Part shown: in pieces, positions 2,650 through 2,768 of the stretch | How positions within the stretch are numbered: the stretch's first letter is position 1 | Layout of the letters: the number at the start of each line of letters is the position of its first letter | Assembly: GCF_001194135.2 (NCBI RefSeq) | Contig: NC_068984.1 | Span: forward strand, 138,611,884 to 138,649,773 | Length of the DNA: 37,890 bases | Direction: 5' to 3' | DNA from: Octopus bimaculoides | Taxonomy: Eukaryota | The notes under the pieces: generated by a model | Seen by the model: the letters and a program-made list of their open reading frames with translations, nothing else | What the model was told of the DNA's origin: nothing | Databases searched by the model: none | Made by a program: the position numbers and the translations under genes

Positions 2650-2768
2650 ATGGATACCTTCAGTGGTGACAGTTCTTTCCGCGAAATGCAAGATTCTGGA
2701 ATAGATGACATATGGGAAATTCTTCAGGATGATTTTTATGAATTAAAAAGTAAAGTTGTTGTCGGAAG
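2650..2768 (+). CDS. MITF: MiT/TFE-family (MITF/TFE3-like) transcription factor, coding exon 1 (equivalent to MITF exon 1A)
   Basis: ATG in strong context (gccagcatcATGG) with an in-frame TAG upstream at 2593-2595. 39 codons + AG, then the consensus donor AG|GTAAGT at 2769. Translation MDTFSGDSSFREMQDSGIDDIWEILQDDFYELKSKVVVG matches the MITF-A start (MQSESGI...YYELKS) and TFE3 (ESGIV...DSFYELKS). Absent from the ORF track. The family is clear, but the vertebrate paralog name is not assignable. Confidence 0.9.

What the first reader, a model, noticed from the sequence alone, without database searches (positions are those of the whole stretch)
2686..2751. Cephalopod-type MiT/TFE factor keeps a beta-TrCP phosphodegron (DSGIDD) and the FYELKS motif of MITF-A/TFE3
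Seen: exon 1 encodes MQ-DSGIDD-IWEILQDD-FYELKS. Known: TFE3 (ESGIVAD) and MITF-A (ESGIVPD) carry an mTORC1-phosphorylated degron read by CUL1-beta-TrCP, which TFEB and MITF-M lack. The canonical degron is DpSG-phi-x-pS. This sequence has the canonical D-S-G-phi-x spacing with Asp at the second phosphosite, so one phosphorylation on Ser16 could complete it. Inference: the mollusc MiT/TFE protein is under nutrient-coupled degradation, and the long MITF-A/TFE3 N-terminus is the ancestral state.
Basis: partly seen in the sequence, partly recalled or inferred. Interest (0 to 1): 0.75.

Follow-up and report, generated by a model that had tools for sequence, protein, structure and literature searches.

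The report
Octopus MITF keeps ancestral N-terminal degron motif
The first coding exon of the octopus MITF gene carries a short motif, DSGIDD followed by FYELKS, that corresponds to the nutrient-controlled destruction signal of human TFE3 and MITF-A; the motif is found from corals to vertebrates, so this is an expected, well-conserved feature of an already annotated gene rather than a surprise.

Summary
Window 2650-2768 (+) is the first coding exon of Octopus bimaculoides MITF (RefSeq XP_052823484.1). It encodes MDTFSGDSSFREMQDSGIDDIWEILQDDFYELKSKVVVG. It splices to 34831-35032, the equivalent of MITF exon 1B1b, which carries the Rag-binding helix. The finding's coordinates, 2686-2751, are exactly M13-S34.

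The motif is not chance. Ser16 and Gly17 are invariant in a 36-protein alignment spanning several phyla. The pattern [DE]-S-G-[IV]-x-x-D ... [FY]YELKS occurs in corals, hemichordates, amphioxus, arthropods, annelids, a nemertean, molluscs, and vertebrate TFE3 and MITF-A.

All six cephalopod sequences I could find carry DSGIDD: three octopus species, two cuttlefish-like isoforms and one further decapodiform contig. Between octopus and that decapodiform contig there are 16 synonymous and 1 non-synonymous differences.

Cephalopods lack one residue, so the conserved Asp sits at +4 from the Ser, which is the canonical DSGxxS spacing. In the other animals sampled it sits at +5.

The claim that the long N-terminus is ancestral is strongly supported. 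Beta-TrCP binding, Ser16 phosphorylation and nutrient coupling in octopus remain inference. The acidic +3 residue also fits a CK2 site.

Verdict: a new member of a known kind, of modest interest.

The parts
2650..2768 (+). First coding exon of O. bimaculoides MITF (CDS part). Encodes MDTFSGDSSFREMQDSGIDDIWEILQDDFYELKSKVVVG plus two bases of the next codon.
   Evidence: ORF and sequence. 100% identical to XP_052823484.1. Homologous mRNA L005 aligns to 2676-2768.
2650..2685 (+). Cephalopod-specific N-terminal extension (M1-E12). It is weakly conserved apart from MDTF. Other invertebrates and MITF-A start at the Met that corresponds to M13.
   Evidence: Octopus MDTFSGDSSFRE against decapodiform MDTFIPES[GN]NF[CS]D, with a 3-nt indel that keeps the frame. 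In the cuttlefish-like mRNA this is the first in-frame AUG after a stop.
2692..2709 (+). Degron-like motif D15-S16-G17-I18-D19-D20.
   Evidence: S16 and G17 are invariant and I18 and D20 at least 90% conserved in 36 proteins from several phyla. Positional profile.
2710..2733 (+). Short acidic-hydrophobic linker IWEILQDD. The Ser is 13 residues from FYELKS, against 17-42 in other animals.
   Evidence: (distance column).
2734..2751 (+). FYELKS motif (F29-S34). Function unknown, but conserved across Metazoa.
   Evidence: S34 invariant; Y30, L32 and K33 at least 90% conserved.
2769..2774 (+). Splice donor GTAAGT of intron 1.
   Evidence: The same junction is seen in decapodiform genomic L001 and mRNA L005.
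2769..34830 (+). Intron 1, about 32 kb. It holds eight of the window's nine assembly gaps, TA/TG microsatellites and SINE-like repeats.
34831..35032 (+). Second coding exon, equivalent to MITF exon 1B1b. Encodes (S)PSPEIKHANHTNRTNLKQQLMKQQVAEQERKE...EVPPQVLQ and includes the helix that matches the Rag-GTPase-binding region. Acceptor tttcag, donor GTATGA.
   Evidence: tblastn. Sequence and frame. R53 is invariant. AF2 helix 50-72. Match to TFEB chains of 7UX2/7UXC/7UXH. PF15951 is listed for the annotated protein.

Best explanation
Window 2650-2768 is the first coding exon of the single MiT/TFE (MITF) gene of Octopus bimaculoides. It is homologous to vertebrate MITF exon 1A and to the degron exon of TFE3.

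It encodes a disordered N-terminal short linear motif, D15-S16-G17-I18-D19-D20. This is the cephalopod version of a motif found across Metazoa: [DE]-S-G-[IV]-[DEV]-hydrophobic-D-[FIL].

Most likely mechanism, by homology with TFE3 Ser47 and the MITF-A N-terminal degron:
1. The next exon's helix (R53...QQLMKQQ) docks the protein on active Rag GTPases at the lysosome.
2. Ser16 is phosphorylated there.
3. D-pS-G-I-D-D is then read by the WD40 domain of SCF(beta-TrCP/Slimb). The fixed Asp stands in for the second phosphoserine, as in the phosphorylation-independent DDGphiXD motif of CDC25A/B.
4. The protein is ubiquitinated and degraded when nutrients are plentiful.

Shown here: gene identity, exon structure, motif presence, deep conservation under purifying selection, predicted disorder of the motif region, and presence of the Rag-helix exon.

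Inferred: phosphorylation of Ser16, the identity of the kinase, beta-TrCP binding, and the effect on half-life.
For: Identity:
- 100% match to XP_052823484.1 over both exons.
- mRNA L005 joins the exons at 2768|34831.

Homology of the motif:
- Alignments place octopus DSGIDD opposite ESGIVAD of TFE3 and ESGIVPD of MITF-A, followed by [FY]YELKS and the R..L[KR]QQLM helix.

Constraint:
- S16 and G17 are invariant in 36 proteins from corals to vertebrates.
- In 47 distinct 10-mers, position -1 is acidic in 100%, S, G and I/V are 100%, and +5 is Asp in 81%.
- Octopus against decapodiform, codons 13-39: 16 synonymous and 1 non-synonymous difference, while the flanks cannot be aligned.

Cephalopod conservation:
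- O. vulgaris, O. sinensis, two cuttlefish-like proteins (99% identical, outside a 34-residue insert, to Acanthosepion pharaonis MITF) and ENA contig L001 all read MQDSGIDDIWE[IF]LQDDFYELKS.

Context:
- AF2 gives pLDDT of about 52 or lower for residues 1-49, and a helix at 50-72.

Literature:
- TFE3 S47 phosphodegron, dependent on CUL1-beta-TrCP and sensitive to Torin (PMC12852735).
- Degron in the amino end of MITF-A (PMC11467436).
- Consensus DpSGX1-3pS and phosphorylation-independent DDGxxD (PMC9606124; PMC10487276).
Against: - No experiment or phosphoproteomic datum for any invertebrate MiT/TFE degron was found in the searchable library.
- The strict beta-TrCP consensus needs Ser/Thr at the second site, and octopus has Asp.
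- The +1 Gly is not a typical mTOR-site residue, and S-x-x-D fits CK2, so phosphorylation may not be nutrient-coupled.
- No Lys lies N-terminal of the motif. The nearest are K33 and K35.
Their presence is assumed from general knowledge of Metazoa.
- Conservation shows that the motif has a function, not which function.
Confidence: 0.6

Rival explanations
1. The motif is a beta-TrCP degron, but Ser16 is phosphorylated by a constitutive acidophilic kinase (CK2-like, consensus S-x-x-[DE]) or by another kinase. Turnover would then be constitutive, or regulated by something other than Rag/mTORC1 nutrient signalling. Dependence on mTORC1 would be a later vertebrate feature that arose when +3 became Val.
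For: - 70% of distinct motifs, including octopus (S16-G-I-D19), have Asp or Glu at +3.
- All vertebrate TFE3 and MITF-A sequences sampled have Val there.
- The surrounding sequence is strongly acidic.
- The CK2 consensus is from general knowledge.
Against: - The Rag-binding helix exon is retained next to the motif in octopus and throughout the family.
- Some invertebrates also lack an acidic +3: Mytilus SGIVTD, Dreissena SGIVMD, annelids and a chiton SGISLD.
- There is no direct evidence for either kinase.
Confidence: 0.2
2. The conserved N-terminal block ([DE]SG[IV]..D[FIL]... [FY]YELKS) is a different kind of short linear motif, for example an acidic-hydrophobic activation or cofactor-binding element, or a localisation signal. 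Its use as a beta-TrCP degron would be a vertebrate co-option.
For: - DSGIDDIWEILQDDFYEL is acidic and hydrophobic, like many activation motifs.
- FYELKS is as conserved as the SG, yet has no role assigned in the papers read.
- Conservation alone does not identify the reader protein.
Against: - The invariant residues are exactly the ones beta-TrCP needs: acidic at -1, Ser, Gly, a hydrophobic residue, then Asp 4-5 residues on.
- Gly invariance is not expected for a generic acidic activation motif.
- beta-TrCP/Slimb reads DSGxxS in both flies and vertebrates (general knowledge).
- AF2 predicts almost no helix in residues 1-49.
Confidence: 0.15
3. Chance occurrence: DSG is a trivial tripeptide in a non-functional or mis-annotated ORF.
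For: The peptide is only 40 residues long, and the surrounding window is low-complexity, AT-rich and full of gaps.
Against: - Exact match to a RefSeq protein.
- Transcript support for the splice.
- Invariance across several phyla.
- 16 synonymous against 1 non-synonymous difference.
- The motif occurs once in 75,780 six-frame residues.
Confidence: 0.02

Closest known systems
Human TFE3 N-terminal phosphodegron (Ser47, ...PESGIVADIE...FYELKS) and the MITF-A exon 1A degron (MQSESGIVPDFE...YYELKS), read by CUL1-beta-TrCP1/2 after Rag/mTORC1-dependent phosphorylation (Nardone et al. 2023, as described in PMC12852735, PMC11257520 and PMC11467436)
   Same: - Same position in orthologous proteins.
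- Same core: [DE]-S-G-I.
- Fixed Asp downstream in place of a second phospho-Ser.
- Followed by [FY]YELKS and then the Rag-binding helix in the next exon.
- Same exon boundaries: the first coding exon ends after KS..., and the 1B1b-like exon ends at VL[KQ].
   Different: - Octopus has Asp (not Glu) at -1.
- Asp (not Val) at +3.
- The fixed Asp is at +4, not +5.
- There are 13 rather than 19 residues from the Ser to FYELKS.
- There is a 12-residue N-terminal extension.
- Function has not been tested in any mollusc.
Canonical beta-TrCP degrons DpSGphiXpS (beta-catenin DSGIHS, IkappaB-alpha DSGLDS; recalled from general knowledge) and the consensus DpSGX1-3pS (PMC9606124)
   Same: D-S-G-I is identical to beta-catenin. 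The spacing to the second acidic or phospho position matches the canonical six-residue motif.
   Different: The second position is Asp, not a phosphorylatable Ser/Thr, so only one phosphorylation can be regulatory.
Phosphorylation-independent DDGphiXD motif of CDC25A/B (CDC25B DDGFVD; PMC9606124, PMC10487276)
   Same: Pattern D-x-G-phi-x-D with Asp at the last position. This shows that beta-TrCP accepts Asp there.
   Different: Octopus has Ser where CDC25B has the second Asp, so it should still need one phosphorylation. Octopus MITF and CDC25 are unrelated proteins.
Invertebrate MiT/TFE orthologues (bivalve, gastropod, annelid, insect and coral MITF-like proteins)
   Same: Same N-terminal module and exon logic.
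   Different: All the non-cephalopod sequences have a hydrophobic residue at +4 and Asp at +5 (for example ESGVDLDF, DSGIEFDL). Most of them start at the Met that equals octopus M13.

Membership tests
MiT/TFE bHLH-Zip transcription factors (MITF/TFE3/TFEB/TFEC) | N-terminal MiT/TFE region (Pfam PF15951), including the Rag-binding helix R..L[KR]QQLM and VLxVxTxLENPT | tested here: met
   - Exon 2 (34831-35032) encodes ...NRTNLKQQLMKQQVAEQERKE...PPQVLQ.
- tblastn hit to TFE3.
- PF15951 is listed for the annotated product.
- TFEB chain of 7UX2 matched at E=0.0095.
- R53 is invariant.
MiT/TFE bHLH-Zip transcription factors (MITF/TFE3/TFEB/TFEC) | bHLH-leucine-zipper DNA-binding domain | tested here: met
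   The domain is not inside this window. It is present in the annotated protein whose first 107 residues the window encodes (P0001, PF00010; ERRRRFNINDRIKELG). AF2 helices at 269-306 and 319-370.
TFE3 / MITF-A type N-terminal degron module | [DE]SGI motif at the homologous position upstream of [FY]YELKS in the exon preceding the Rag-helix exon | tested here: met
   Alignments.
TFE3 / MITF-A type N-terminal degron module | Rag/mTORC1-dependent phosphorylation of the motif Ser | not testable with these tools
   Needs cell or phosphoproteomic experiments. Only the docking helix could be checked, and it is present.
TFE3 / MITF-A type N-terminal degron module | CUL1-beta-TrCP-dependent instability that is lost on Ser-to-Ala mutation | not testable with these tools
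   No data for any invertebrate were found in the searchable library.
Canonical beta-TrCP phosphodegron (D-pS-G-x(2,3)-p[ST]) | Asp-Ser-Gly followed by a hydrophobic residue | tested here: met
   D15-S16-G17-I18.
Canonical beta-TrCP phosphodegron (D-pS-G-x(2,3)-p[ST]) | Phosphorylatable Ser/Thr 4-5 residues after the first Ser | tested here: not met
   Position +4 is Asp20 and +5 is Ile21. The motif is a hybrid of DSGphiXS and DDGphiXD. The same holds for TFE3 and MITF-A, which have Asp at +5.
Canonical beta-TrCP phosphodegron (D-pS-G-x(2,3)-p[ST]) | Located in an accessible, disordered segment | tested here: met
   AF2 with a 36-sequence alignment: residues 1-49 have pLDDT of about 39-52 with almost no secondary structure. 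A low-confidence prediction is only indirect evidence of disorder.
Canonical beta-TrCP phosphodegron (D-pS-G-x(2,3)-p[ST]) | Direct binding to the beta-TrCP WD40 domain | not testable with these tools
   No complex prediction or binding assay was available.

The most novel reading that the evidence does not exclude
The [DE]-S-G-[IV]-x-x-D motif is a degron that needs only a single phosphorylation and has controlled MiT/TFE stability since before the cnidarian-bilaterian split. On this reading, beta-TrCP-mediated turnover is an ancestral mode of MiT/TFE regulation by nutrients, and TFEB, TFEC, MITF-M and short TFE3 are derived forms without the degron.

Cephalopods then deleted the +4 residue. 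That converted the family's DSGxxxD spacing into the canonical DSGxxD spacing, which could change affinity for beta-TrCP or the kinetics of turnover.
Probability: 0.4. Interest if true: 0.5.

Novelty: new member of a known kind. Interest (0 to 1): 0.33.

Why it matters
If the octopus motif works as in TFE3 and MITF-A, then regulated degradation is an ancient layer of MiT/TFE control by nutrients, alongside 14-3-3 retention in the cytoplasm. The isoforms without the degron that dominate the literature (TFEB, MITF-M) would be the derived condition.

The family-wide use of Asp in place of the second phosphoserine suggests a switch that needs only one kinase event.

The cephalopod one-residue deletion is a natural spacing variant that could be used to probe how beta-TrCP reads +4 against +5 acidic positions.

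Practically, this adds little. The gene is already annotated. As I recall it (I could not read the paper here), the abstract of the 2023 degron paper calls the phospho-degron evolutionarily conserved.

Tried and rejected
- The first word-index protein search with the 107-residue spliced peptide found nothing. The exhaustive representative search then found the RefSeq protein and its orthologues.
- An exact look-up of the octopus exon-1 ORF found no contig.
- The key paper, Nardone et al. 2023 (PMC9908011), and Hallsson et al. 2004 (PMC1470875) are not held. I therefore could not check how far back the published 'evolutionarily conserved' claim reaches.
- A literal text search for ESGIV returned only noise.
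- I searched the window for the alternative degron-less first exon seen in other lophotrochozoans and amphioxus. Only spurious hits to an intronic repeat came back. The gaps (4,153 N in the window) mean it cannot be excluded.
- I considered that the tggttgttcag at 2609-2619 is a 3' splice site, which would make the ATG exon a second exon. In decapodiforms the whole 449-nt 5'UTR is colinear with the genome, so I treat it as unproven for octopus.
- A check of the 14-3-3/mTORC1 site (S-A-P...D-S-P) shows only loose conservation in lophotrochozoans. I do not rely on it.
- tRNA and Rfam scans of the window were empty.
- No other long coding ORF is present in the window.

Full report
**1. What is in the sequence**

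Window 2650-2772 (+) is a 40-codon ORF, MDTFSGDSSFREMQDSGIDDIWEILQDDFYELKSKVVVGR. The ORF's last codon and its stop codon come from a GTAAGT splice donor that begins at 2769. The coding exon is therefore 2650-2768 (119 nt, ending two bases into a codon).

The start codon lies in a good context (ATCATGG), and an in-frame stop lies 19 codons upstream. The finding's coordinates, 2686-2751, are exactly M13-S34 (MQDSGIDDIWEILQDDFYELKS).

Reading the DNA gives:
- acceptor tttcag
- exon 34831-35032
- donor GTATGA

Joining 2768 to 34831 keeps the frame and gives 107 residues...KSKVVVGSPSPEIKHANHTNRTNLKQQLMKQQVAEQERKE...EVPPQVLQ.

**2. Whose gene it is**

An exhaustive HMMER search of 1.84 billion representative proteins returned a 449-residue protein that is 100% identical over all 107 residues. 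The cluster look-up names it XP_052823484.1, microphthalmia-associated transcription factor isoform X2 of Octopus bimaculoides.

Transcript evidence comes from a related cephalopod. P0140 is 99% identical, apart from an alternatively spliced 34-residue insert, to the partial MITF of the cuttlefish Acanthosepion pharaonis. It is encoded on RNA-seq assembly contigs. One of these, L005, behaves as follows:
- It aligns to window 2676-2768 and then directly to 34828-34942, so the two window exons are joined at the same junction.
- Its 449-nt 5'UTR plus exon 1 are colinear with the genomic decapodiform contig L001.
- Its MDTF start is the first in-frame AUG after a stop.

The exon layout matches vertebrate MITF: exon 1A, then 1B1b ending at VLK, then exon 2 beginning VQTHLENPT. 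The vertebrate layout is from PMC6672050 and general knowledge.

**3. Is the motif more than chance?**

Within the window, DSG[ILVMF]x[DEST] and [FY]YELKS each occur once in 75,780 six-frame residues. They lie 8 residues apart.

Comparative evidence is stronger. A full-length search and the representative search gave MiT/TFE proteins from:
- cnidarians (Orbicella, Oculina)
- hemichordates and amphioxus
- insects and a crustacean
- annelids and a nemertean
- a chiton, many bivalves and many gastropods
- cephalopods
- vertebrate TFE3 and MITF

Wherever the long N-terminus is present, it reads [DE]-S-G-[IV]-[DEV]-hydrophobic-D-[FIL]-[DE], followed 17-42 residues later by [FY]YELKS and then by the R..L[KR]QQLM helix.

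| Position relative to Ser | Result in 47 distinct 10-mers |
|---|---|
| -1 | acidic in 100% |
| 0, +1, +2 | Ser, Gly and Ile/Val in 100% |
| +3 | acidic in 70% |
| +5 | Asp in 81% |
| +7 | acidic in 60% |

In a 36-protein full-length alignment, the only invariant columns N-terminal of the basic region (K277 onward) are S16, G17, S34, R53, V108, L112, P115 and T116.

**4.

O. vulgaris and O. sinensis are identical to O. bimaculoides in this exon. Two cuttlefish-like proteins and an ENA genomic contig (L001, another decapodiform, 83.5% identical to L005 at the DNA level) read M..[DS]DMQDSGIDDIWEFLQDDFYELKSKVVVG.

Between octopus and L001, codons 13-39 differ at 16 synonymous sites and 1 non-synonymous site (I24F). 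The UTR and the intron cannot be aligned. That is purifying selection on the peptide. DSG is therefore conserved across the octopus-decapodiform divide.

**5. What is particular to cephalopods**

- A 12-13-residue N-terminal extension. It is weakly conserved except for MDTF, and its frame is kept across a 3-nt indel. Most invertebrate proteins and MITF-A start at the Met that equals M13: MQDSGI..., MADSGI..., MSESGV..., MQSESGIV....
- Loss of the +4 hydrophobic residue. The near-universal Asp-hydrophobic pair therefore sits at +4/+5 (DSGID-DI) rather than +5/+6 (for example DSGIEFDL, ESGVDLDF, ESGIVADI). The motif becomes literally D-S-G-phi-x-D, which is the canonical spacing.
- A short linker, with 13 residues from the Ser to FYELKS.

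It is a trait of the whole family, however, not an octopus novelty. The cephalopod novelty is the spacing.

**6. Mechanism**

The papers I could read state the following:
- The degron is absent from short TFE3 and from melanocyte MITF (PMC11257520).
- A degron lies in the amino end of MITF-A (PMC11467436).
- The beta-TrCP consensus is DpSGX1-3pS, and beta-TrCP also accepts the phosphorylation-independent DDGphiXD of CDC25A/B (PMC9606124; PMC10487276).

Octopus DSGIDD is DDGphiXD with Ser at the second position. One phosphate on Ser16 would therefore complete a known recognition pattern.

The AlphaFold2 model, built from the 36-sequence alignment, gives low confidence and almost no secondary structure for residues 1-49. 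It gives a helix at 50-72 over the region that matches the Rag-binding helix. The exon-2 region matches TFEB chains of the Rag-Ragulator-mTORC1 structures 7UX2/7UXC/7UXH.

My best explanation is that this is the octopus orthologue of the TFE3/MITF-A phosphodegron module: Rag docking, Ser16 phosphorylation, SCF-beta-TrCP recognition, then degradation.
- Shown: homology, constraint and context.
- Inferred: phosphorylation, the kinase, the E3 ligase, and the physiological coupling.
- Rough likelihoods: about 0.97 that the homology statement is right, about 0.6 that the motif is a working beta-TrCP degron in octopus, and about 0.45 that it is coupled to mTORC1 and nutrients.

**7. Rival explanations**

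(a) Same E3 ligase, different kinase. S-x-x-[DE] at +3 fits CK2 and is present in octopus and in 70% of distinct motifs, but it is Val in all vertebrate sequences sampled. Nutrient coupling could therefore be a vertebrate refinement.

(b) A different short linear motif, such as an acidic-hydrophobic activation or binding element, that vertebrates later co-opted as a degron. Against this, the invariant residues are exactly those beta-TrCP needs, including the Gly.

(c) Chance. This is excluded by sections 2-4.

**8. Comparison with what is known, and novelty**

This is a member of the MiT/TFE family and of the TFE3/MITF-A N-terminal module by every sequence criterion I could test. It fails the strict canonical beta-TrCP regular expression only at the second phospho-acceptor, as TFE3 and MITF-A do too.

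In the searchable library, no paper links this degron to invertebrates. The evolutionary review of the family says in a figure legend that N-terminal sequences of some proteins were omitted for space (PMC7815692). As I recall it, the abstract of Nardone et al. 2023 calls the phospho-degron 'evolutionarily conserved'. I could not open that paper, so I cannot say how deep their comparison went.

I rate this as a new member of a known kind. The 'ancestral N-terminus' inference is now well supported, back to cnidarians. The functional claim remains untested.

A specialist would not be surprised that octopus MITF keeps the motif. The Metazoa-wide invariance of Ser-Gly and the cephalopod spacing change are small but usable additions.

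Noticed in passing
window 7558-7747(+), 11705-11894(+), 16849-17038(+), 14845-14977(-), 20982-21114(-), 22710-22842(-): A SINE-like interspersed repeat of about 170 nt is present in six copies in intron 1, in both orientations, at 64-89% identity. Several copies end in (TA)n or (TACA)n tails. It produced spurious tblastn hits (PKVP.SGTEPGTM..SKLLTTQ). There is no tRNA or Rfam match.
   Followed up: partly
window 1620-2244, 2875-3488, 8480-8579, 14980-15492, 18164-18890, 21324-21841, 22888-22962, 29821-30009, 36058-36849: Nine assembly gaps total 4,153 N, and several of them are flanked by TA/TG/TACA microsatellites. Eight of them lie in intron 1, so small exons in intron 1 could be hidden.
   Followed up: no
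window 9587-9716 and 12955-13084; ORF pieces at 9560-9904(+) and 35204-35509(-): A second dispersed repeat. Two 130-nt copies are 88% identical. Similar translated pieces (..HEGQSxGTGNSHT...PPAQEPVRR..) lie in opposite orientation in intron 1 and just after exon 2. It is probably a decayed transposable element.
   Followed up: no
window 2609-2619: tggttgttcag lies 30 nt upstream of the ATG and looks like a 3' splice acceptor, so the octopus ATG exon might be preceded by a non-coding exon. In decapodiforms the whole 449-nt 5'UTR is colinear with the genome (L005 against L001), which argues against this.
   Followed up: partly
related proteins P0144, P0145, P0161, P0167, P0168, P0169, P0192, P0200, P0019 (lophotrochozoans); P0178-P0185 (amphioxus): Other invertebrates have alternative N-termini without the degron, joined to the same Rag-helix exon. 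One conserved lophotrochozoan type reads ..TVIVVTKGN..LLRSLLK..GRIEKIKIIKSP, and an amphioxus type reads ..NSLLSSLLDGKKVDLFQHN. Choosing between isoforms with and without the degron through alternative first exons may therefore predate vertebrates. No such exon was found in this window.
   Followed up: partly
related proteins P0002, P0027 (unionid mussels Sinohyriopsis, Sinanodonta): These carry a tandem duplication of the core motif: MQDSGIDSGIDIDF.
   Followed up: no
related proteins P0138 (O. sinensis isoform X1, 483 aa) and P0140 (cuttlefish-like, 484 aa): Both are about 34 residues longer than the short isoforms. In P0140 the insert ETSNIVSTGDDMDGSFLDFNNTFNTMPNDGVFDK lies between LTQLSTT and LPQTGV, upstream of the bHLH domain. 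The position in P0138 was not examined. The insert lies outside this window.
   Followed up: no
P0001 residues 168-182 (outside the window): The 14-3-3/mTORC1 site region of TFEB and TFE3 (S-A-P-N-S-P) appears in lophotrochozoans as S-A-P-x-x-(x)-D-S-P (octopus HTASAPLTNPDSP). It is recognisable but has extra residues between the two Ser-Pro elements.
   Followed up: partly
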